Shown here: piece after piece, positions 2,298 to 57,365 of the stretch
Layout of the letters: each line of letters opens with the position of its first letter
How positions within the stretch are numbered: position 1 is the stretch's first letter
IMG/VR virus record: IMGVR_UViG_3300002835_000007
Coordinates: 1 to 64,000 of that record
Reading direction: 5' to 3' (one strand)
DNA: 64,000 nt
Made by a program: the position numbers and the translations under genes
Notes under the pieces: generated by a model
What the model saw: only the letters and a program-made list of their open reading frames with translations
Told to the model about the DNA's origin: nothing
Database searches by the model: none

Positions 2298-2346
2298 CCT
2301 TGACTTTTTTGTACCTTGTCGTATATTTATTGTAAAAGATAGATAT

Positions 2347-2988
2347 ATGGCAAGAGCAGAAAAGAAAATACATTACCTATATAAAACTACTTGTTTCATA
2401 ACTGGTAGATGGTATATAGGAATGCACAGCACACATAACTTAGAAGATGGTTATATGGGTAGTGGAAAACGATTAAGGTATTCTATACGTAAGTATGGAG
2501 TTGATAATCATAAAAAAGAGATTTTAGAGTTCTTTGAGAGTAGGGAATTATTAATTGAAGCTGAAATAAAAGCAATCACTGAAGATATGGTTACAGATAA
2601 AAACTGTATGAATCTTAAATTAGGTGGCCAAGGAGGTTTTATTAATGAAGAACATAAACAAAAATTCATAAATTCAGATGGACCTAAAAATTTTGCTAAA
2701 AGGTTGATTGAGGATGAAGAATTTAGATTAAAACATTTTGCGATTATATCTGAAAGGATGAAGAAAACACATGCAAATGGTAAAATTAAATATGATACAT
2801 TCAAAGGTAAACAACATTCAGATGAAACTAAACAAAAAATGAGTGAATCATCTAAAGGTAAAGGTATTGGTGAATCAAATAGTCAATACGGTACTTGTTG
2901 GATAACCAAAGAGAGTGTTAATAAAAAAATTAAAAAAGAAGACCTTGACACATACCTAATTGAAGGATGGGTTAAAGGTAGAAGATAA
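2347..2988 (+). CDS. GIY-YIG homing endonuclease (Seg-like) with NUMOD3 motif
   Basis: YLYKTT...WYIGMHST...YMGSG; FKGKQHSDETKQKMSES; true start ATG 2347. Confidence 0.9.
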   Translation: MARAEKKIHYLYKTTCFITGRWYIGMHSTHNLEDGYMGSGKRLRYSIRKYGVDNHKKEILEFFESRELLIEAEIKAITEDMVTDKNCMNLKLGGQGGFINEEHKQKFINSDGPKNFAKRLIEDEEFRLKHFAIISERMKKTHANGKIKYDTFKGKQHSDETKQKMSESSKGKGIGESNSQYGTCWITKESVNKKIKKEDLDTYLIEGWVKGRR

Positions 2989-4729: not shown

Positions 4730-5695
4730 ATGAATAATGAAAGTAAAACAGTCGATATCGATATCGACAAACAAAAATTTGAAGAGTTAATTGATTTGTT
4801 AGATGCGTACACAACTATCGGGTCAAAAGTTGGTCGTGATGTAATTGACGGTCATGAGTGTGAAGTAAGGTTTGTTTTAGTAACCCCAGATTTAGCGGCT
4901 GAAATACTAGAAAATTACAATAGCGAAAATAGACCTTTTTCACAAAGTAATGTTGCTAAATTAGTTAAAGAAATTAATTCTGGTAATTGGTCATTCAATG
5001 GAGAACCAATATCTTTCAACAGTAAAGCTAATGTGTCAAATGGTCAACACAGATTACAAGCAATTGTTTTAACTGGTATTGCATTGAGATTTTTAGTTAC
5101 AACTGGTCTTGACCCTAAAAGTTTTGCTACTATGGATAACGGTAGAAAAAGAACTGGTTCTGATGTTTTAGCTATTGCTGGTGTTGGTAATTATACAACT
5201 GCTGCATCTGTTTGTAAATTTGTTTACTCTTTTAAAAACGGAAATTTTGGTTCTGTTTATAGAGCATCAGAAAGTAGAACTTTGACAAATACTCAAATTG
5301 AAAGTTACTACACAACATTAACAAATGTTGATGAGAGCATTAAATTTGGTGCTGCTATGTCGAAAAAAAGTAATGGGTTATTGAAAGCAACTATTTTAGG
5401 TGGGTTTCATTATTTGTTATCTGAGATTGATGAAGTTTTAGCTGATGAGTTTTTAACTAAACTATCAACTGGTATCGATTTAAAACAAGGTTCACCAATT
5501 ATTTCATTAAGAAATAGATTACTTAAATCTACAACTGATGATAATTACAGAATCACTAGTGAAACTTTAATGAAATTAATCGCATATAGTTGGGAGAAAT
5601 TCGTTAAAAACGAAACTGTTAAGAATCTTAAATTACCAGAAAACTATGAAATTAATCTTTATGGTTCATCAAACCAAAAAACATTAAATTTCTAA
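4730..5695 (+). CDS. ParB/Srx-like N-terminal domain protein
   Basis: VTPDLA..NRP..W.FNGEPI..NGQHRL. Confidence 0.7.
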   Translation: MNNESKTVDIDIDKQKFEELIDLLDAYTTIGSKVGRDVIDGHECEVRFVLVTPDLAAEILENYNSENRPFSQSNVAKLVKEINSGNWSFNGEPISFNSKANVSNGQHRLQAIVLTGIALRFLVTTGLDPKSFATMDNGRKRTGSDVLAIAGVGNYTTAASVCKFVYSFKNGNFGSVYRASESRTLTNTQIESYYTTLTNVDESIKFGAAMSKKSNGLLKATILGGFHYLLSEIDEVLADEFLTKLSTGIDLKQGSPIISLRNRLLKSTTDDNYRITSETLMKLIAYSWEKFVKNETVKNLKLPENYEINLYGSSNQKTLNF

Positions 5696-5731
5696 AAAAA
5701 CGTAACCGAAGATAGTTTTTCGGTTACACTT

Positions 5732-5805
5732 GGACCTCTAGCTCATTCGGTTAGAGCAACTGACTCATAATCAGTAGGTGCTTGGTTCGATTCCAAGGTG
5801 GTCCA
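5732..5805 (+). tRNA. tRNA-CAT, probably Ile2 (lysidine type)
   Basis: GGACC.../...GGTCC-A acceptor typical of Ile2; ACTGA-CTCATAA-TCAGT. Confidence 0.85.
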
Positions 5806-5932
5806 CATTTAGGTGATTCTCAGTAATGGAGATAGTAGAATCTTTAGAGTATTGAACATGAAAAGGCTGGCAAACCGTTAAATTATTTCTCAGTAGTGCC
5901 TCACATAACCACTATGATACTCACTAAATTAC

Positions 5933-6006
5933 GGTTCCGTAGCTCAGCTGGATAGAGCCACGCACTTCTAATGCGTAGGTCACACGTTCGAATCGTGTCG
6001 GAATCA
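5933..6006 (+). tRNA. tRNA-Arg(TCT)
   Basis: GGTTCCG/CGGAATC; ACGCA-CTTCTAA-TGCGT. Confidence 0.95.
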
Positions 6007-6012
6007 CAATAA

Positions 6013-6138
6013 TGGAAGGTAGCCCAATTGGTAGAGGCAGCGGAATGCAAAAAGATTAATCTGTTTTAAAGATTAAGTTCAGCAATTTAAACGCTATTTA
6101 GGAACCGAAAAGTGTTAGTTCGAATCTAACCCTTCCGA
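6013..6138 (+). ncRNA. tRNA body with ~50-nt CAGCAA module inserted in the anticodon arm
   Basis: TGGAAGG/CCTTCCG acceptor, D arm, GTTAG-TTCGAAT-CTAAC T arm; insert TTAATCT/AGATTAA hairpin + GTTCAGCAA. Confidence 0.75.
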
Positions 6139-6446
6139 CAAAAGAAGAGTGAGCAGCATTAGCCAAGTTGGAACGAGTACCAGCGTGAAGGTCAAAAATA
6201 CTCGGCTCATGACTTCTGAAAAAAAGTTTGAAAAAAACTTGCAAATGTAAAATAAAGTTAGTACATTTGTAGTATAGAAAAAGTTCTTTGAAAAGTATTA
6301 GAAATGAGGGTGTTACATTCTTAAATTTCTTTAAAAAAGTTACTAAAAAACTTGACATTTGCTTAAAAATGTCGTATATTAGTAACATAAAAATTGGATT
6401 AATTATCATAAAATAAAAAAGTAAAAAAAAAAAGAAAAAAAAGAGT

Positions 6447-7082
6447 ATGGCAACACCAAAAAGTACACCAGCAAGAAAAGCTTCTGCAAATACAGAAGTA
6501 GTTTTAGGACAAGCAGCAGCACAAATCGCTAAGGCTGTTAACGAATTAAAAGCAGCAACTGCAACAGTTTCTACTTTATCTGACCAGTCAGAGCAATTAA
6601 CTATGTTAGTAGCTAACAAAGAGGAGTCAATCGCTTCATTAGAAGTAGAGTACGCTGAGAAACGTAGACAATATGACGTTGAGTTAGAATTGTCTTTCAA
6701 AGCTAACCAAGAAAGAGTTGTAAATGAGTGGTTACGTTCAAACGGATACACATCTATTTCAACAGCTGACTTAACAACTTTACGTTCTGATTTAGAAACT
6801 TCTAGAACAAACACTGAAGCAACAGTTAAGAAAGAAGTAGCTACTGTAGCTGCAACTTTAAAATCTCAGTACGAGAATGAAATTAAATTAATTCACTCTG
6901 AGAACAAAGCTGTTGCTGCTGAAAACGCTGCAAAAATTGGTACGTTAGCAACACAAAACTCGTTCTTACAAGAACAAGTTACTAAGTTGTACGAACAATT
7001 AGATGCTGAGCGTTCTGCTGGTATCGAAAGAGCGAAAGCTGGGTCAGTAGGTTCAATTAACGTTGCACCAGCTGGTAAGTAA
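6447..7082 (+). CDS. coiled-coil hypothetical protein
   Basis: ORF track; Ala/Glu/Lys-rich heptads. Confidence 0.8.
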   Translation: MATPKSTPARKASANTEVVLGQAAAQIAKAVNELKAATATVSTLSDQSEQLTMLVANKEESIASLEVEYAEKRRQYDVELELSFKANQERVVNEWLRSNGYTSISTADLTTLRSDLETSRTNTEATVKKEVATVAATLKSQYENEIKLIHSENKAVAAENAAKIGTLATQNSFLQEQVTKLYEQLDAERSAGIERAKAGSVGSINVAPAGK

Positions 7083-7126
7083 TTAGCAATGATATTCTAC
7101 GTGGGGAACTGCGTAGAATGTTACAA

Positions 7127-7267
7127 GGGTAAAAAGATTATTTCAGCAACCAAAAATTCAAGCCTTGTTAATGCCGTGGTCGTGGGTTCGAATCCCACAC
7201 TGTCCATGATAATGGGCGGTTAGCTCAGCTGGTTAGAGCACGTATGAAAAAAAGTTAATCTTGTCCC
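7127..7267 (+). ncRNA. circularly permuted tRNA-like RNA (T arm-acceptor-D arm) closed by CAGCAA stem
   Basis: AAGATTA(7134)/TAATCTT(7256); T arm 7182-7198; ACTGTCC(7199)/GGGCGGT(7214); D arm GCTC/GAGC. Confidence 0.8.
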
Positions 7268-7296
7268 CCAAATTGGAGTCCTCTGCTCCTTAAACA

Positions 7297-7437
7297 GAGT
7301 AATTAAAAGATTGTTTCAGCAATTAAACTCAAAAATTGTATGGATAACAAGCGGTCTGGGTTCGAATCCCAGCATGTCCTAACAGAGGTGTGGGCGTGTG
7401 GTGTAATGGTAGCACAAAAAGAGCAATCTTGATACTC
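7297..7437 (+). ncRNA. second circularly permuted tRNA-like RNA closed by CAGCAA stem
   Basis: AAGATTG(7307)/CAATCTT(7424); T arm 7356-7372; CATGTCC(7373)/GGGCGTG(7392); D arm GTG-TAATGGTAG-CAC. Confidence 0.8.
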
Positions 7438-7441
7438 AAAT

Positions 7442-7519
7442 ATGGCGTTAGCTCAGCTGGTAGAGCACTGTTGGTTTTAACTGGCAGATGGGTCGTAGGT
7501 TTGAATCCTACACGCTGTA
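7442..7519 (+). pseudogene. aberrant tRNA (Lys-like loop, 7-bp anticodon stem)
   Basis: Normal D arm and GTAGG-TTTGAAT-CCTAC T arm; CTGTTGG-TTTTAA-CTGGCAG arm; weak acceptor. Confidence 0.6.
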
Positions 7520-7681
7520 CAATGTTTCTTTGTTTTATAAAACAAAGTGGTGGTAGTCTGGGGTGTTAAAACTCTCGGTCCCAAAAAAATAAGGTTGGTA
7601 ATTTACTGTAAAGCTATGGCTTCCTTCAAAAAAGTGGCACTATCGTTTGGTAGTGTCATTTTTTATTTGTACCTTTGTCAA

Positions 7682-10283: not shown

Positions 10284-12122
10284 ATGGAAAATGTTAATGG
10301 AGTACAAGGTGGTTTAGCGGCAAAATGGAATCGTTTGACCAAATTAAGTAAAATGTTAATTATGGGTGTTGGTTTAGCAATTGTTTTAGCAGTTGTGTAT
10401 ATGGCCGCACCAGGTTTAAGAGTTGCAGTGTCAAAAGAAATGAAAGCGTTAGCAATCAATTCTGACGATTTAAACAACGTAACTAAAGGTGCTGAATTAC
10501 CTTTACCATCTACGGAAGTGTCTAGTAACTTTGACGAAAGTAAGTTGATTAGAATAGCTGAGTACGCATGGAATGGTAACTCTGGTATGATTGTAGCAAA
10601 TGGTGGACCAAGAACAACTGAAGGGTCTCTTATGGAGGCTGCTGATGTAAACTTGGAAATCGTGCGACAAGATATGGTTGGTGGTTTACGTGATATGCAA
10701 ATAAAATTTGTTGATGAATTTAGCAAAGGTGTTGCTTATCCAAAATCACAAAAGTCAGCGTTTGCTGTATCTATCATGGGTGATGGTGTGCCTTTTTACA
10801 TTACAACTACTCAAAAAGCGTTAGATGAGAAGTTTGGTAAAGGTAAATATCACGTAGTTAATATCGGTGCAATCGGTTTATCATATGGGGAGGACAAATT
10901 AATTGGTCCAAAAGTATGGCAAGATAACCCACAAACACTTAGAGGTGCGGTTGTATCATCAGTAATCGGTGATGGTGACTGGGTAGTAGCTGTAAACTAT
11001 GCATCTGCGAATGGTATTCCAGTTAATCCAGACCCAACAACTTTTGATGCTAATGCATTGAACTTTGTACCGTCACAAGATGATGACTTTATCAACTCTG
11101 TAAAAGAATTGATTAAATCACAAAACACTGGATTTACTGTACCTTTGAAAGAAGTTAAAGATGGTAAATTGACTGGTAAGACAATCAACCATAAAATTGA
11201 TGGTGCAACAACATGGACTCCAGGTGATAAAATGGCTTTTGATGCGTTGACTGGGTTTACTGATGTTGTTACAACAAAAGATTTCGTTAACCAAATGGCT
11301 ACATCAATTATCGTAGTGAAAGAATGGGCGATACAACATGAAAAAGAAGTAACGAATATTTTGAAACAAACATATACTGCTTGTAACCAAATTAAACAAT
11401 ACGATAGATGGGCCCGTAAGGCTGCTGAATGTGTTGCAAAAACATACAACTTTGAAACTGCTGATTATTGGTACAAAATGTTCAAAGGACAAAAAGGTAC
11501 TAAAGGTGGTTTAGATTACAATATTGGTGGTACACGTGTATTTAACTATGCTGATGCTATGCAATACTACGGAATCACGGATGGTAATAACAGATATAAA
11601 GCGGTTTACAATCAAGTATCTATGTACTTAACTGACTTGAACCCATGTGGTTTCAACGAAACATGTAAAGATGGTGTTGTGCAATACGAAGATGCTGTTA
11701 ACTTATACTTCTTGAAATCTATTAGTGATGTTGATGCTGGAACTACTCAAAAGTTCAACTATGTTGAGAATAAAACTAAAGTGATGGCAGATGGACAATG
11801 GAACATTAGCTTTGCTACTGCAAGTACAACTATCCAAGGTTCTGAGAAAACGTTAGAGACTATCTACAACTTGTTAATTCAAGCTGAACAAACTAAATTG
11901 AAAGTGATTGGTCATACAGATAATGTTGGTAATCCACAATCTAATATGGTATTGTCTAGAGGTCGTGCTAACTCAGTTGTTGATTATTTGGTTAATCGTG
12001 GGATTCCTAAAGCACGTATTCAATTTGTGGATGGTTTAGGTGATACTAATCCAGTAGCTACAAATGCAACTGCGGCTGGTAAATCGAAAAACAGACGTGT
12101 AGAGATTACATTGTTACAATAA
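10284..12122 (+). CDS. ABC substrate-binding-like protein fused to OmpA C-terminal peptidoglycan-binding domain
   Basis: N-terminal TM; C-terminal GHTDNVG..N..LS..RA..V..YL...NRRVEI. Confidence 0.85.
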   Translation: MENVNGVQGGLAAKWNRLTKLSKMLIMGVGLAIVLAVVYMAAPGLRVAVSKEMKALAINSDDLNNVTKGAELPLPSTEVSSNFDESKLIRIAEYAWNGNSGMIVANGGPRTTEGSLMEAADVNLEIVRQDMVGGLRDMQIKFVDEFSKGVAYPKSQKSAFAVSIMGDGVPFYITTTQKALDEKFGKGKYHVVNIGAIGLSYGEDKLIGPKVWQDNPQTLRGAVVSSVIGDGDWVVAVNYASANGIPVNPDPTTFDANALNFVPSQDDDFINSVKELIKSQNTGFTVPLKEVKDGKLTGKTINHKIDGATTWTPGDKMAFDALTGFTDVVTTKDFVNQMATSIIVVKEWAIQHEKEVTNILKQTYTACNQIKQYDRWARKAAECVAKTYNFETADYWYKMFKGQKGTKGGLDYNIGGTRVFNYADAMQYYGITDGNNRYKAVYNQVSMYLTDLNPCGFNETCKDGVVQYEDAVNLYFLKSISDVDAGTTQKFNYVENKTKVMADGQWNISFATASTTIQGSEKTLETIYNLLIQAEQTKLKVIGHTDNVGNPQSNMVLSRGRANSVVDYLVNRGIPKARIQFVDGLGDTNPVATNATAAGKSKNRRVEITLLQ

Positions 12123-12139
12123 ACTAACATTATTTAATT

Positions 12140-12170
12140 AAAGTCCCTAACTTTGTTAGGGATTTTTTTT
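12140..12170 (+). terminator. intrinsic terminator
   Basis: AAAGTCCCTAAC-TTT-GTTAGGGATTTTTTTT. Confidence 0.75.
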
Positions 12171-12190
12171 GAACTTTAAAAAATAAAAAT

Positions 12191-12961
12191 ATGAAAAATT
12201 TAATTAAACCATTTCAAGAACTTAAAAGTACGTCAAGAGGTACAATCATGTTAGGTTGGTTAGTAGCTATACTTACATTTTGGACCTTGAATATGTTTGG
12301 AACATCACATATGTTTCCAACACCAACACAAGTTATCCATGGATTTGGTGACTTATGGGCTGAAGGATTAGTTGTTCACATAGTTAGTTCAATTGCGTTA
12401 TGTGCACATGCTGTATTCTTATCAGTGATTATATCATTGGTTATCGCATATTCAACAGCAATTCCAATTATGAAGCCAGTAGGTACATTTATATCTAAAT
12501 TAAGATATCTTCCATTGACTGGTATTGCTTTTTATTTAGCTATCATTATTAACGATGCTAGAAGTCTTCAAGTATGGGTGCTTGTAGTGTTCATGACAAC
12601 GTTTCTAACGACTTCTCTTATTCAAATGATACAAGATATCCCCAAAGAAGAATTGGACCACGCAAAAACGCTAGGATGCAATCGTTGGGAGATTTTATGG
12701 GAAGTAGTTATCAAAGGTAGATTAGATTACGTGTTAGAGTTGGTAAGACAAAACTTAGCAATTGTATGGATGATGCTTGTAACGGTTGAGTCTATATTAG
12801 CAGCAGCTGGTGGTATGGGATTCTTAATCAAAAATAGTGACAAGTTAGGTGACAATGGTAGAGTAATTGCATTACAAATTATAATTGTAGTTGTAGGGTT
12901 ATCATTGGACTTTATCATCACTAAATTACGTAAATTAATATTCAGATATTCAAATTATTAA
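12191..12961 (+). CDS. ABC transporter permease (TauC/SsuC-like)
   Basis: FPTP..V; EAA-loop-like DHAKTLGCNRW; WMMLVTVE...GMGFLI. Confidence 0.88.
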   Translation: MKNLIKPFQELKSTSRGTIMLGWLVAILTFWTLNMFGTSHMFPTPTQVIHGFGDLWAEGLVVHIVSSIALCAHAVFLSVIISLVIAYSTAIPIMKPVGTFISKLRYLPLTGIAFYLAIIINDARSLQVWVLVVFMTTFLTTSLIQMIQDIPKEELDHAKTLGCNRWEILWEVVIKGRLDYVLELVRQNLAIVWMMLVTVESILAAAGGMGFLIKNSDKLGDNGRVIALQIIIVVVGLSLDFIITKLRKLIFRYSNY

Positions 12962-12964
12962 GAC

Positions 12965-13786
12965 ATGAGTTATAGAGAATTAGATACAATATTATACGTT
13001 GATAAGATTAGCGTTGGGTATGAAGGAAAAACAATTCTTAAAGATATTTCAATCATTGAGAAAAATATAGTAAGAGATGGTCACGATTCCACTGGACAAA
13101 CAATTGCGGTGTTAGGTCGTTCTGGTAGAGGTAAATCTACATTGTTCAAAGCGTTGACTGGATTGGTTAAACCAATGTCTGGCCAGATTTTGATAAGTGA
13201 TATGGCTACAGAAGTTGCAGATGATGCAAAAATATTGGCTGAAGGTGATGTAGGGTTTGTTGACCAAAAATACACTTTGTTCAGACATAAAACAGTATAT
13301 CAGATTTGTCAATATGCATTAAGAAAAAGTAAAACGACAAAACAAGAGAAAGATAAGTTGATTACTGAGTTTTTAACTGAATGGGGTTTATTAGAACACA
13401 AAGATAAATACTCATGTGAGTTATCTGGTGGTCAAAGACAAAGAACTGCAATCATTGAGCAAATGTTATCATCTAAACATTTTATGATTTTGGATGAACC
13501 ATTCTCTGGATTGGACGTTGGAAACATTGAGAAAGTTAAAACATCTTTCCAAAAGATTTTGGATGCTGACGAATATAACACAATCATATTTTCAACACAC
13601 GATATCAGATTGGCTGCTGAATTGGCTGATAGTATTTATATTATTGGTAACCCAGAGGGTACAACTGAATATTCAACAGTCTTAAAACACTATGATTTAA
13701 AGAAAATGGGATTAGCTTGGACACCATATGGTGAGGGTCATAGAAAAGTGGTTGCTGACATAAAAGAAATATTATTAAAATCGTAA
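12965..13786 (+). CDS. ABC transporter ATPase (TauB/SsuB-like)
   Basis: GRSGRGKST, LSGGQRQR, ILDEPFSGLD, STHD. Confidence 0.93.
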   Translation: MSYRELDTILYVDKISVGYEGKTILKDISIIEKNIVRDGHDSTGQTIAVLGRSGRGKSTLFKALTGLVKPMSGQILISDMATEVADDAKILAEGDVGFVDQKYTLFRHKTVYQICQYALRKSKTTKQEKDKLITEFLTEWGLLEHKDKYSCELSGGQRQRTAIIEQMLSSKHFMILDEPFSGLDVGNIEKVKTSFQKILDADEYNTIIFSTHDIRLAAELADSIYIIGNPEGTTEYSTVLKHYDLKKMGLAWTPYGEGHRKVVADIKEILLKS

Positions 13787-15883: not shown

Positions 15884-15957
15884 AATAAAAGATAGCTTCA
15901 GCAATTTCACAACTATCAAACTTTTAATTTGAATCAGAAAATGCTATCTTGATTTAT
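15884..15957 (+). ncRNA. CAGCAA-stem RNA displaying a lone Lys(UUU) anticodon hairpin
   Basis: AAGATAGC(15889)/GCTATCTT(15943), TTCAGCAA, TCAAA-CTTTTAA-TTTGA 15916-15932; own promoter TACATTTG 15867. Confidence 0.7.
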
Positions 15958-16428: not shown

Positions 16429-16555
16429 GGGGGTGTTGAAATGTTAGATAAATCACATTCTGCCTTTTAGATTAAAGAATGTTTGCAGCAAAATCAAAAT
16501 TATTCACGCAAACTGTAAATTTGATAAAACGTTGGTGCAATTCCAGCCGCCCCCA
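16429..16555 (+). ncRNA. tRNA-like ends enclosing CAGCAA module and Tyr(GUA) anticodon hairpin
   Basis: GGGGGTG/CGCCCCC-A; ACATTCT/AGAATGT + TTGCAGCAA; CAAA-CTGTAAA-TTTG; GTTGG-TGCAATT-CCAGC. Confidence 0.7.
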
Positions 16556-56878: not shown

Positions 56879-57365
56879 AAGTTAATGAATAATTTATTTT
56901 AGATAAAATTGAAATTTGTCCATTTTAAATTAGGAATATCTAAATAAGATTCTTACATTTGTCAAATCTAATTAAAACTTTATATCATGTCAAGAAAGAA
57001 AAAAACATTTGATGTATTAGCATTTAAAGAATACGTCAACATTCAACTAGCAAGAACTGATGAACATGCAACAGAAGACTTTAAATGTGGTTTGTCTGTC
57101 GCTTTGGGAGAAGTGTTGCATCGTACTGGTAACTATAATGGGTTTACCCATTTGTATTGGAACGAAATTGGTTGGCAAGAGTGGAGAACTATTGGTAAAG
57201 AAACCGAAGTTTGGGAAGAAAAGAAATTGTTTATCTACGGAACACCAGACAGCAAATATAAAGGAAGTAGATACGCTTTAAGATATTATTAATGATAATA
57301 GGGGACGCTGAAAACCTAGACAGAGTAGGCAAATAATAAAAGTTAAATAAAAAAAAAAGAAAAAA

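What the first reader, a model, noticed from the sequence alone, without database searches (positions are those of the whole stretch)
6013..6138. Same CAGCAA module inserted into the anticodon arm of a normally ordered tRNA
Seen in sequence: intact acceptor, D and T arms, but about 50 extra nt in the anticodon arm. They contain TTAATCT-G...AGATTAA-GTTCAGCAA, the stem of the 7127/7297 elements with its strands in the opposite order. This RNA is therefore a circular permutation of those elements, opened at the acceptor end rather than at the module stem. Inference: the module plus tRNA elbow is the selected 3D unit. The insert is too short for a group I intron but could be a protein-recruiting or excisable element.
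Basis: partly seen in the sequence, partly recalled or inferred. Interest (0 to 1): 0.8.

Follow-up and report, generated by a model that had tools for sequence, protein, structure and literature searches.

The report
tRNA mimic carrying Ro-protein docking hairpin
A phage gene that looks like a tRNA with about 50 extra bases is most likely not an intron-bearing tRNA: it is probably a tRNA-shaped small RNA whose extra hairpin docks a phage Ro60-like RNA-binding protein, one member of a large family of such RNAs that I could not find described.

Summary
Window 6013-6138 is a tRNA cloverleaf (Rfam tRNA, 34 bits) with a 61-nt insert between the anticodon-stem strands. The insert holds an A-rich run, a 7-bp hairpin (UUAAUCU/AGAUUAA) and CAGCAA.

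The same module, with its strands in the opposite order, closes two permuted tRNA bodies (7134-7263, 7307-7431) and an anticodon-arm-only RNA (15889-15951).

The module is a widespread phage RNA motif, AGAnnnn-N(1-3)-CAGCAA...nnnnUCU-G. It is strongly enriched beside genes for a DUF2828+vWA protein (PHROG 850): 90 sense-strand copies in 80 loci, against 0.4 in shuffles. It often abuts that gene's ribosome-binding site.

A confident model of the protein matches Ro60/TROVE structures. Jumbo phages closely related to the window's phage encode it, and tRNAs carrying the same hairpin lie beside it in unrelated phages.

Best reading (0.6): an unspliced, Y-RNA-like tRNA mimic whose hairpin docks the Ro60-like protein. 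The splicing reading (0.15) is not excluded.

Limits:
- No Ro-like gene lies in the 64-kb window.
- No RNA reads cover 6013-6138.
- Binding is inferred, not shown.

Novelty: new variant of a known kind.

The parts
6013..6138 (+). tRNA-shaped RNA with the module inserted in its anticodon arm (the finding)
   Evidence: Rfam tRNA 34 bits with a 61-nt insert. Conserved in L003, L005 and L266. RNAs with the same layout lie beside Ro-like genes in other phages.
6013..6019 (+). acceptor stem, 5' strand (pairs with 6131-6137; discriminator A at 6138; no encoded CCA)
   Evidence: Read from sequence. The 1-72 pair covaries: U.G in the window, C-G in L005, U-A in L266. Acceptor pairs are 100% canonical across 17 related RNAs.
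6022..6038 (+). D arm with G18 G19
   Evidence: cmscan alignment.
6040..6043 (+). anticodon-stem 5' strand GCGG (pairs with CCG at 6105-6107)
   Evidence: L003 has 4 pairs; L005 and L266 have 5.
6044..6054 (+). 5' part of the interrupted loop (AAUGCA, which resembles U33-GCA-A37) followed by the A-rich run AAAAAG
   Evidence: Read from sequence. An A-rich run precedes the UCU-side strand in all module copies.
6056..6076 (+). module hairpin: UUAAUCU (6056-6062), loop GUUUUAA, AGAUUAA (6070-6076)
   Evidence: RNAfold predicts it in all four homologues. The module stem is 98.3% canonical, with double-sided changes at 7 of 7 pairs across 17 RNAs.
6080..6085 (+). CAGCAA, the invariant single-stranded signature of the module
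   Evidence: Invariant in alignments A2 and A3 and in more than 100 module copies.
6114..6130 (+). T arm (GUUAG UUCGAAU CUAAC)
7134..7263 (+). permuted tRNA body closed by the module: module strand + CAGCAA, anticodon arm (GUU at 7167-7169), T arm 7182-7198, acceptor hairpin 7199-7220, D arm 7223-7239, positions 26-28, A-rich run, module strand 7256-7262, then G
   Evidence: Acceptor stems covary between phages. Weak YrlA match of 39 bits, below the gathering score of 69.
7307..7431 (+). second permuted tRNA body closed by the module (AAGAUUG/CAAUCUU)
   Evidence: Metatranscriptome contigs with 0 mismatches span 7281-7433 and 7284-7420 uncut and unspliced.
15889..15951 (+). module enclosing only an anticodon-like hairpin (UCAAA-CUUUUAA-UUUGA), directly after a TTG...TAnnTTTG promoter and before tRNA-Tyr
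   Evidence: The same hairpin occurs in L100.
16429..16555 (+). tRNA-like RNA with acceptor and T arm, a closed module variant (ACAUUCU/AGAAUGU + GCAGCAA) and the anticodon-like loop CUGUAAA
   Evidence: A homologue lies in L100.
6142..6219 (+). possible further module RNA (AGAAG.GUGAG-CAGCAU ... CUCAU..CUUCU-G), a weaker variant
   Evidence: Read from sequence only. Not tested further.

Best explanation
Window 6013-6138 most likely encodes a stable, unspliced small RNA of the Y-RNA kind. It is an L-shaped tRNA body (acceptor, D and T arms intact) whose anticodon arm has been turned into a docking site. That site, 'the module', is a 7-10 bp helix with conserved AGA/UCU-G at its outer end, the single-stranded motif CAGCAA on one side of its inner end, and an A-rich strand on the other. 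I infer that the module is bound by a phage Ro60-like protein (Pfam DUF2828 + DUF7788/vWA; PHROG 850). The same protein would bind the module in its own 5' UTR, next to the ribosome-binding site, to limit its own synthesis. The tRNA-shaped part would be handled like a tRNA at its ends (RNase P, 3' trimming, CCA addition). It would act as adaptor or bait, linking the Ro-like ring to tRNA-recognising factors. Those could be tRNA repair or quality-control enzymes, or host anticodon nucleases; which of these applies is speculation. Shown here by computation: the fold, the module, its conservation and covariation, its linkage to the gene, and the Ro60-like fold of the protein. Inferred: binding, lack of splicing, and the biological role.
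For: (1) Fold and insert. (2) The module recurs in the window in both strand orders. It also recurs in dozens of phage contigs with compensatory stem changes: UUA/UAA, UUG/CAA, UAG/CUA, UGA/UCA, UCG/CGA, CAC/GUG and others. (3) Linkage to the protein gene. Contigs found by an RNA pattern alone carry a DUF2828+DUF7788 gene directly beside the RNA: L137, L138, L148, L150, L156, L164, L169, and L133 at 1.4 kb. Conversely, loci found through the protein carry 90 sense-strand modules in 80 loci, against 2 antisense and 0.4 in shuffles; a second set gives 34 against 0.15. (4) Minimal modules sit 1-30 nt before the Shine-Dalgarno sequence and start codon of the gene in many lineages, which looks like an operator (L150, L156, L169, L138, L133, L300, L301, L302, L311, L329 and more). 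(5) The protein is Ro60-like. The AlphaFold model has pLDDT 91.4. Its top 12 PDB matches are all Ro60/TROVE structures, at E 1.5e-8 to 1e-5 and TM 0.34-0.59 (all but the Deinococcus Rsr, 2nvo, at 0.46 or above). The vWA MIDAS residues DxSxS are invariant. Mycobacteriophage members are annotated 'Ro-like RNA binding protein'. (6) The four large contigs that carry the same permuted tRNA elements as the window encode the protein, followed by a 110-200 nt module RNA. (7) The 6013 layout recurs beside the gene in unrelated phages: L422:3352-3472, L325:417-541, L361:948-1064, L345, L348, L366 and L320. All helices covary. (8) The unspliced 7307-7431 element is present in two metatranscriptomes. (9) Precedent: YrlA Y RNAs are tRNA mimics encoded next to Ro60, and M. 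smegmatis YrlA is cut by RNase P and receives CCA (PMC4201824).
Against: No Ro-like gene lies in the 64-kb window, and the window's own 206-kb contig did not appear among relatives of the protein. The contig may be incomplete, since related genomes are 233-362 kb, but this is unproven. No binding experiment exists, so the protein link is guilt by association. No RNA contig covers 6010-6449 in four metatranscriptomes, so accumulation of this RNA is not shown. In the window, L003 and L005 the 5' part of the interrupted loop looks like a real anticodon loop (U33, GCA or UGC, A37). The window's ordinary tRNA set lacks Cys and Asn, exactly what 6013 (GCA) and 7134 (GUU) would supply if they were matured. 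The motif (CAGCAA) differs from every experimentally defined Ro60 site (GGUCCGA, GNCGAAN0-1G, CGAA).
Confidence: 0.6

Rival explanations
1. It is a true tRNA-Cys(GCA) gene interrupted by a short intron. The module is the handle of a protein-dependent splicing or repair route, for example an endonuclease plus an RtcB-type ligase, possibly chaperoned by the Ro-like protein. That route would excise the intron here and join the two ends of the permuted genes at 7134 and 7307 to give tRNA-Asn and another tRNA.
For: The 5' exon would end with a canonical A32-U33-GCA-A37. The ARAGORN set in the window lacks Cys, Asn, His, Ile, Ser and Trp. The 7134 family carries well-formed anticodon arms (GUU, UUU, CUU, CCU) with U33 and A37 in most copies. 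Ro60 systems are linked to RNA ligases, and Listeria phage AG20 has a 'tRNA splicing ligase' 1.3 kb from its Ro-like gene (PMC7824862).
Against: At 61 nt the insert has no group I core, and no Rfam intron or ribozyme family matches it. I found no bulge-helix-bulge at the borders by inspection. Homologous RNAs lack U33 in the interrupted loop: L266 has AAUGCAA, L422 AAGAAAC, L325 CAAUAAU and L361 CCAAAAAAU. The window copy has a degraded anticodon stem. Module RNAs exist with no acceptor or no tRNA part at all, so they cannot be spliced into tRNAs. Felix O1-like phages with a full ordinary tRNA set still carry them. RNA contigs show the unspliced 7307 element and no joints.
Confidence: 0.15
2. 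The module is a processing or stability signal for tRNA-cluster transcripts, such as a nuclease site or an end-clamping helix. In this reading it is unrelated to the Ro-like protein, and its closeness to that gene only reflects both sitting in tRNA clusters.
For: Modules lie in tRNA clusters, often 5-15 nt from the next tRNA. In the window's clade most copies are about 35 kb from the protein gene.
Against: In many lineages the module sits in the 5' UTR of the protein gene, directly at the ribosome-binding site, with no tRNA nearby. In mycobacteriophage Lewan three modules fill the gap after the gene in a region without annotated tRNAs. The strict sense-strand bias and the adjacency in distant phage groups are hard to explain otherwise.
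Confidence: 0.1
3. It is a decaying tRNA pseudogene disrupted by a small inverted-repeat mobile element that acts at the DNA level.
For: The window copy has two mismatches in its anticodon stem. The module enters tRNA bodies at several different positions.
Against: The acceptor, D, T and module helices are all kept by compensatory changes across distant phages. The asymmetric CAGCAA always lies on the transcribed strand. The element is conserved between phages that differ by more than 10% in a neighbouring protein.
Confidence: 0.05

Closest known systems
YrlA-type bacterial and phage Y RNAs bound by Ro60/Rsr (Rfam RF02553; Chen et al. 2014, PMC4201824)
   Same: A small RNA encoded next to, and on the same strand as, a ring-shaped TROVE+vWA protein. 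A helix carries a short conserved single-stranded motif on its 5' strand as the presumed protein site. A tRNA-like domain has T arm, D arm and a 7-bp acceptor-like stem. There are several such RNAs per genome. The permuted copies at 7134 and 7307 have the YrlA order (T arm, closed acceptor, D arm).
   Different: The protein belongs to DUF2828/PHROG 850 and is recognisable as Ro60-like only by structure, not to Pfam TROVE. The motif is CAGCAA, not GNCGAAN0-1G or CGAA. Rfam YrlA scores stay far below threshold (39 and 19 bits against 69). Many copies carry a complete anticodon-like arm. In the 6013 type the topology is inverted: the tRNA acceptor is open and the protein site is an internal hairpin in the anticodon arm.
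[quoted passage not shown]
   Same: The end state is a tRNA-like body with free acceptor ends, held on a Ro60-binding helix. This is the shape that 6013-6138 encodes directly.
   Different: There it arises by processing a closed acceptor and leaves two RNA pieces. Here it is one chain by gene design.
Thermus phage phiLo Ro60 with Yrl1/Yrl2 (PMC12135203; PDB 9KOP, 9L5Y)
   Same: A phage-encoded Ro60 homologue with phage-encoded partner RNAs next to the gene. It is the best structural match to the protein modelled here.
   Different: Those RNAs are stem-bulge-stem Y RNAs with a CGAA motif and no tRNA body.
Circularly permuted tRNA genes (Cyanidioschyzon merolae and other algae; Thermofilum pendens).
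   Same: The 3' half lies upstream of the 5' half, a short linker joins the acceptor ends, and the break lies in the anticodon arm (this applies to 7134 and 7307).
   Different: Those genes use a bulge-helix-bulge motif, the splicing endonuclease and a circular intermediate. None of these is evident here, and they are not known in bacteria or phages (one search found no report).
Intron-containing tRNAs (bacterial group I introns; archaeal and eukaryal bulge-helix-bulge introns)
   Same: An insert in the anticodon loop near position 37/38.
   Different: The size and motifs fit neither class. There is no evidence of removal.

Membership tests
Y RNA / YrlA (Ro60-associated tRNA-mimicking ncRNA) | Encoded within about 4 kb of a Ro60 orthologue, on the same strand | tested here: inconclusive
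   Not met in the window: no such gene lies in the 64 kb. Met for RNAs with the same layout in L422, L325, L361, L345, L348, L366 and L320, and for module RNAs in general. Close relatives of the window's phage encode the gene about 35 kb away.
Y RNA / YrlA | Helix with the conserved GNCGAAN0-1G (CGAA) motif as the Ro60 site | tested here: not met
   The conserved motif is CAGCAA next to an AGA/UCU-G helix. In 6013 the helix is an internal hairpin rather than the paired RNA ends.
Y RNA / YrlA | tRNA-like domain (T arm, D arm, acceptor-like stem, tertiary-pair nucleotides) | tested here: met
   cmscan tRNA alignment with G18 G19 and UUCGAAU. Helices covary.
Y RNA / YrlA | Reaches the Rfam RF02553 gathering score (69 bits) | tested here: not met
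   39.3 bits at 7153-7265 and 19.2 bits at 5952-6072.
Y RNA / YrlA | Physically bound by the Ro60 protein | not testable with these tools
   Needs RIP, CLIP or gel-shift experiments.
Ro60/TROVE protein family (for the inferred partner protein) | HEAT-repeat ring plus a vWA domain with a MIDAS site | tested here: met
   AlphaFold model pLDDT 91.4. The top 12 Foldseek PDB hits are Ro60/TROVE. DxSxS is invariant. There is no Pfam TROVE hit; only DUF2828 + DUF7788 match.
tRNA (RF00005), functional decoder | Cloverleaf reaching the gathering score | tested here: met
   34 bits against 29.
tRNA (RF00005), functional decoder | Seven-nucleotide anticodon loop on a 5-bp stem, directly or after splicing | tested here: not met
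   61 nt lie between the stem strands, and only 3 pairs remain in the window copy. U33 is not conserved among homologous RNAs. Splicing was not observed.
Group I intron in tRNA | Catalytic core P3-P9, usually more than 200 nt | tested here: not met
   The insert is 61 nt. No Rfam intron family matches, even at E<=10.
Bulge-helix-bulge tRNA intron / permuted tRNA gene | Two 3-nt bulges separated by a 4-bp helix at the exon borders | tested here: not met
   Inspection of 6013, 7134 and homologues found no conserved 4-bp helix flanked by bulges at the borders.
Bulge-helix-bulge tRNA intron / permuted tRNA gene | Spliced or circular junction in RNA | tested here: inconclusive
   No joints appear in four metatranscriptomes, but only assembled contigs were available and 6013-6138 had no coverage.

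The most novel reading that the evidence does not exclude
The module-bearing genes are real decoding tRNAs (Cys, Asn, Lys, Tyr and others). Their maturation would depend on the Ro60-like ribonucleoprotein together with an RNA ligase: removal of the module from 6013-type genes, and end-joining of the permuted 7134-type genes. That would be a protein-guided tRNA splicing and permutation pathway in phages of bacteria. It might be used to keep phage tRNAs hidden from, or repairable after, host anticodon nucleases.
Probability: 0.1. Interest if true: 0.95.

Novelty: new variant of a known kind. Interest (0 to 1): 0.72.

Why it matters
Ro60-Y RNA particles are conserved from bacteria to humans, yet what the tRNA-like part of bacterial Y RNAs is for remains open.

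This finding points to a second, much larger and apparently undescribed branch of that system. A Ro60-like protein family (DUF2828/PHROG 850) is present in at least 711 sequenced phages, including Felix O1-like coliphages, Listeria P100/A511-like phages, Staphylococcus and Campylobacter phages and mycobacteriophages. It is paired with small RNAs that share one simple docking module.

These RNAs range from bare hairpins to complete tRNA bodies with anticodon arms, in both circular permutations. Because the module also sits on the protein's own ribosome-binding site, binding and autoregulation are directly testable in E. coli, Salmonella and M. smegmatis phages.

The finding also matters for annotation:
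- tRNA finders miss or mis-call these genes.
- 'tRNA with intron' or 'permuted tRNA' calls in phage genomes may often be Y-like RNAs.

Tried and rejected
- **Known RNA families.** cmscan at gathering and at E<=10 thresholds over the region, and over six other loci, found only tRNA and weak sub-threshold YrlA/tmRNA hits. No intron or ribozyme family matched.
- **Bulge-helix-bulge at the insert borders.** None is conserved.
- **A pairing partner for CAGCAA.** I considered the D loop GCUG, the UGC before the A-run, and a downstream CUGA. Each exists in some copies only, so none is conserved.
- **The module as a degenerate acceptor stem plus D region of a nested tRNA.** The 7-bp stem, UU and discriminator-like G suggested this. 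It does not fit the A-rich spacer or the bare 5' UTR hairpins.
- **RNA-processing genes next to the element.** Pfam on 10 neighbouring window ORFs gave OmpA, ABC transporter, UvrC-motif and GP88 domains, nothing RNA-related.
- **Close relatives among sequenced phages by DNA.** Only generic tRNA matches were found.
- **RNA evidence.** Four metatranscriptomes were laid on 5900-7540. They gave no coverage of 6013-6138 and no splice or back-splice joints. The 'joints' listed are other organisms' tRNA T-arm fragments.
- **The Ro-like gene in the window's own genome.** Neither tblastn and tblastx on the window nor two protein-seeded scans of viral contigs returned the window's contig. A metagenome scan gave contig names I could not map to the source sample.
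- **Literature.** I found no paper on permuted or intron-bearing tRNAs in phages, nor on DUF2828/PF11443 RNA partners.

Full report
**Context**

The window is the first 64 kb of a 205.9-kb IMG/VR contig from a freshwater jumbo phage. All ORFs run on the + strand. By eye, the promoters are of the Bacteroidetes TTG...TAnnTTTG type. ARAGORN finds 19 tRNA genes in two clusters but no Cys, Asn, His, Ile, Ser or Trp.

**Checking the observation**

Rfam's tRNA model matches 6013-6138 end to end at 34 bits, above its gathering score of 29. There are 61 nt where the anticodon loop should be; ARAGORN misses it.

Read directly from the sequence, the RNA has:
- a 7-bp acceptor stem (6013-6019/6131-6137);
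- a D arm with GG;
- a T arm with GUUCGAAUC;
- anticodon-stem strands GCGG and CCG.

Between those strands lie AAUGCA, AAAAAG, the hairpin UUAAUCU-GUUUUAA-AGAUUAA, GUU, CAGCAA and an 18-19-nt linker.

The elements at 7134-7263 and 7307-7431 carry AAGAUUA-UU-UCAGCAA ... UAAUCUU-G and AAGAUUG-UU-UCAGCAA ... CAAUCUU-G. This is the same stem with the strands in the other order, and with an A-U to G-C compensatory change between the two copies.

It is also more than chance. TTCAGCAA occurs 14 times against 3.1 expected. The full module almost never arises in shuffled phage DNA: 0.4 per 347 kb.

**What the neighbouring elements are**

Comparison with 13 related loci, fetched through the protein gene at 6447-7082, gives the following.
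- The 7134 element is a complete tRNA body in permuted order: anticodon arm from position 29, variable loop, T arm, acceptor 3' strand, a 5-8-nt loop, acceptor 5' strand, D arm, and positions 26-28. The module stem joins the two ends.
- Its acceptor stems differ completely between phages but stay paired.
- Its anticodon loop reads CUGUUAA (GUU) in most relatives, and UUU, CUU or CCU in others.
- The 7307 element is similar, with the break near 26/27.
- 15889-15951 is the module around nothing but an anticodon-like hairpin (CUUUUAA loop).
- 16429-16555 is a tRNA-like RNA with a closed module variant.

The three RNAs share a topology but are not permutations of one molecule.

**The module is a widespread motif**

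Pattern scans of IMG/VR, followed by scripted filtering, gave about 40 further distinct elements in other phage contigs. They fall into several layouts:
- permuted full tRNA bodies;
- bodies without an acceptor hairpin;
- RNAs of about 90 nt with only an anticodon-like arm and a T arm;
- closed 6013-type copies (L266).

The constant part is AGA(U/C)nnn, 1-3 nt, CAGCAA (rarely CUGCAA), a variable interior, an A-rich run, then nnn(A/G)UCU(U/A)G. The inner 2-4 stem pairs covary freely.

**The lead that explains it**

I clustered the ORFs around the elements and ran Pfam on the recurrent ones. A 480-530-aa protein with DUF2828 and DUF7788 domains turned up. It is encoded immediately next to the RNA in L137, L138, L148, L150, L156, L164 and L169, and 1.4 kb away in L133.

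In L150, L156, L169 and L138, two module RNAs precede the gene. A third, minimal module (AAGAAUU-UGA-ACAGCAA ... AAUUCU-G) ends one nucleotide before the Shine-Dalgarno sequence.

Going the other way, I fetched 80 phage loci through the protein alone. Modules were on the gene's strand 90 times in 46 loci, against 2 antisense and 0.4 in dinucleotide shuffles. A second protein-seeded set gave 34 against 0.15. Many copies are 33-60-nt hairpins abutting the ribosome-binding site. That placement is classic for an RNA-binding protein that represses its own translation.

**The protein is Ro60-like**

The family is large: at least 1,695 proteins. It has no PDB or NCBIfam sequence match.

An AlphaFold2 model built from 31 sequences is confident (pLDDT 91.4, pTM 0.90). 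Its 12 best Foldseek matches in the PDB are all Ro60/TROVE structures: Thermus phage phiLo Ro60, Xenopus and human Ro60, and Deinococcus Rsr (E 1.5e-8 to 1e-5, over about 520-570 aligned columns). Only vWA domains follow them. The MIDAS DxSxS residues are invariant.

The family is PHROG 850, 'RNA-binding protein'. It occurs in 711 sequenced phages, and mycobacteriophage members are annotated 'Ro-like RNA binding protein'.

Module RNAs flank the gene in three cultured phages that I inspected:
- three copies after the gene in mycobacteriophage Lewan, one of them a permuted tRNA body;
- four copies in the tRNA cluster after the gene in a Felix O1-like Salmonella phage, plus a CUGCAA variant in its 5' UTR;
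- three copies before the gene in Listeria phage AG20, where an RtcB-type 'tRNA splicing ligase' lies 1.3 kb away.

**Link back to the window**

The window itself has no such gene, and its contig did not come up in two protein-seeded scans.

However, the four large contigs that carry the same permuted tRNA elements do encode the protein. These are the contigs of L012, L010 and L008, and contig 3300028676_000003. The protein gene there is followed about 60 nt later by a 110-200-nt RNA closed by the module.

In the closest relative the gene lies about 35 kb from the tRNA cluster, on the side that in the window would fall beyond the start of the contig. The contig is 206 kb, against 233-362 kb for its relatives. 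The gene may therefore simply be missing from the assembly. I could not settle this.

**The 6013 layout is recurrent**

A covariance model built from the four close homologues was searched over loci around Ro-like genes. It recovered tRNAs carrying a module hairpin in their anticodon arm in several unrelated phages, often two to four in tandem directly beside the gene. The loci are L422, L366, L325, L361, L345, L348, L320 and L338.
- L422:3352-3472 has the same order of parts as 6013, down to the GGAA before the 3' strand of the anticodon stem.
- L320 encodes a 3' CCA.

Over 17 such RNAs, every helix is maintained by compensatory change:
- acceptor: 100% canonical, 7 of 7 pairs with double-sided change;
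- module stem: 98.3% canonical, 7 of 7 pairs;
- anticodon stem: 90% canonical, 5 of 5 pairs;
- T stem: 100% canonical.

One caveat applies: the alignment was fitted to the model's structure, which favours it.

**Splicing or not**

Several points argue against excision.
- The insert has no group I core, and no Rfam intron or ribozyme family matches it.
- I found no conserved bulge-helix-bulge motif.
- The nucleotide at position 33 of the interrupted loop is U in the window, L003, L005 and L320. It is A or C in L266, L422, L325 and L361. That is not expected for a 5' exon that must form an anticodon loop.
- Many module RNAs could never become tRNAs.
- Metatranscriptome contigs from two river samples cover the 7307 element uncut and unspliced with zero mismatches. 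A 1-kb contig from a relative runs through both permuted elements.

Other points keep the splicing reading alive.
- The loop in the window's clade does look like U33-GCA-A37 (UGC in L005).
- The window lacks ordinary Cys and Asn tRNAs.
- No reads at all covered 6013-6138.
- Only assembled contigs were available, so rare spliced forms would be invisible.

I give splicing 0.15.

**Mechanism proposed**

Shown by computation:
- an L-shaped tRNA body with an inserted helix-plus-CAGCAA module;
- conservation and covariation of the module;
- its genomic coupling to a Ro60-like gene, including operator-like copies;
- the Ro60-like fold of the protein.

Inferred:
- the protein binds the module;
- the RNA is stable and is trimmed like a tRNA, as M. 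smegmatis YrlA is cut by RNase P and given CCA (PMC4201824);
- the tRNA-shaped part acts as an adaptor or bait for tRNA-recognising factors.

The frequent Asn, Lys, Tyr and Arg-type anticodon loops are those typically hit by anticodon nucleases. That statement rests on my own background knowledge. A role in tRNA surveillance, repair or counter-defence is therefore attractive but untested.

**Comparison with what is known**

The system works like Ro60-Y RNA, and specifically like YrlA. It fails YrlA's defining sequence motif and the Rfam threshold, and its protein lies outside Pfam TROVE.

Chen et al. searched only genomes annotated with a TROVE protein. I found no paper on RNA partners of DUF2828/PF11443, and Rfam 15 has no matching family.

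I therefore rate it a new variant of a known kind. The 6013 architecture, with an open tRNA and the docking hairpin inside the anticodon arm, is an arrangement not described for Y RNAs.

Noticed in passing
window 7280-7299 and 7383-7388 (also L004, L005, L008, L028): A small hairpin before the 7307 element has the loop sequence CCUCUG. That loop is complementary both to CAGAG just after it and to CAGAGG in the loop that closes the acceptor stem of the 7307 element. All three covary between phages (CCUCUA/UAGAGG in L008, CCUCUU/AAGAGG in L028). This suggests a loop-loop contact or a switch.
   Followed up: partly
window 6142-6219: Directly after the 6013 RNA lies another stem (AGAAG.GUGAG / CUCAU..CUUCU-G) followed by CAGCAU. 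It encloses a D-arm-like hairpin and may be a sixth, degenerate module RNA.
   Followed up: no
window 7442-7520; L003 4180-4258 and 4601-4672; L005 6991-7063: A tRNA with an 8-nt anticodon loop (ARAGORN anticodon 'ttta'). Its homologues read 'ttat' or AUA in relatives. L003 also has a tRNA with anticodon UUA, called 'Stop' by ARAGORN, which hints at unusual decoding in this phage group.
   Followed up: no
L350-L356, L359, L364, L365, L369, L373 (5' UTRs of DUF2828-family genes): One subgroup of the Ro-like genes has no CAGCAA module upstream. It has a different conserved hairpin (CCUCUUGUCCAAGAGG) about 20 nt before the ribosome-binding site, possibly an alternative operator.
   Followed up: no
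L598 (Listeria phage AG20, NC_020871.1) 2164-2427 and 5255-6506: Three module RNAs precede the Ro-like gene. A gene annotated 'tRNA splicing ligase' (RtcB type) lies 1.3 kb downstream, echoing the bacterial rsr-yrlA-rtcB arrangement.
   Followed up: partly
L148 1932-2219 and 3297-4550: The Ro-like gene appears split into two tblastn pieces about 1.1 kb apart. This could be an intron, an intein or a homing-endonuclease insertion.
   Followed up: no
window 2341-2988: An ORF with an N-terminal sequence of the GIY-YIG homing-endonuclease type sits inside the tRNA cluster. Homologues recur in related loci (L011, L151).
   Followed up: partly
window 57298-57331: A DUF805b RNA motif (RF02914) just reaches its Rfam gathering score (35.8 bits against 35.6).
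   Followed up: no
window 10284-13786: The phage encodes an OmpA-domain protein, an ABC-transporter permease-like protein and an ABC ATPase in a row. This is unusual cargo for a phage.
   Followed up: no
L100 (reverse strand) about 1130-1230 and 1376-1500; L124 2376-2480: Relatives carry other tRNA genes with 25-50-nt inserts in the anticodon region that lack the CAGCAA module. One has a stem followed by GUUCAAAUGC. These may be a second kind of insert.
   Followed up: no
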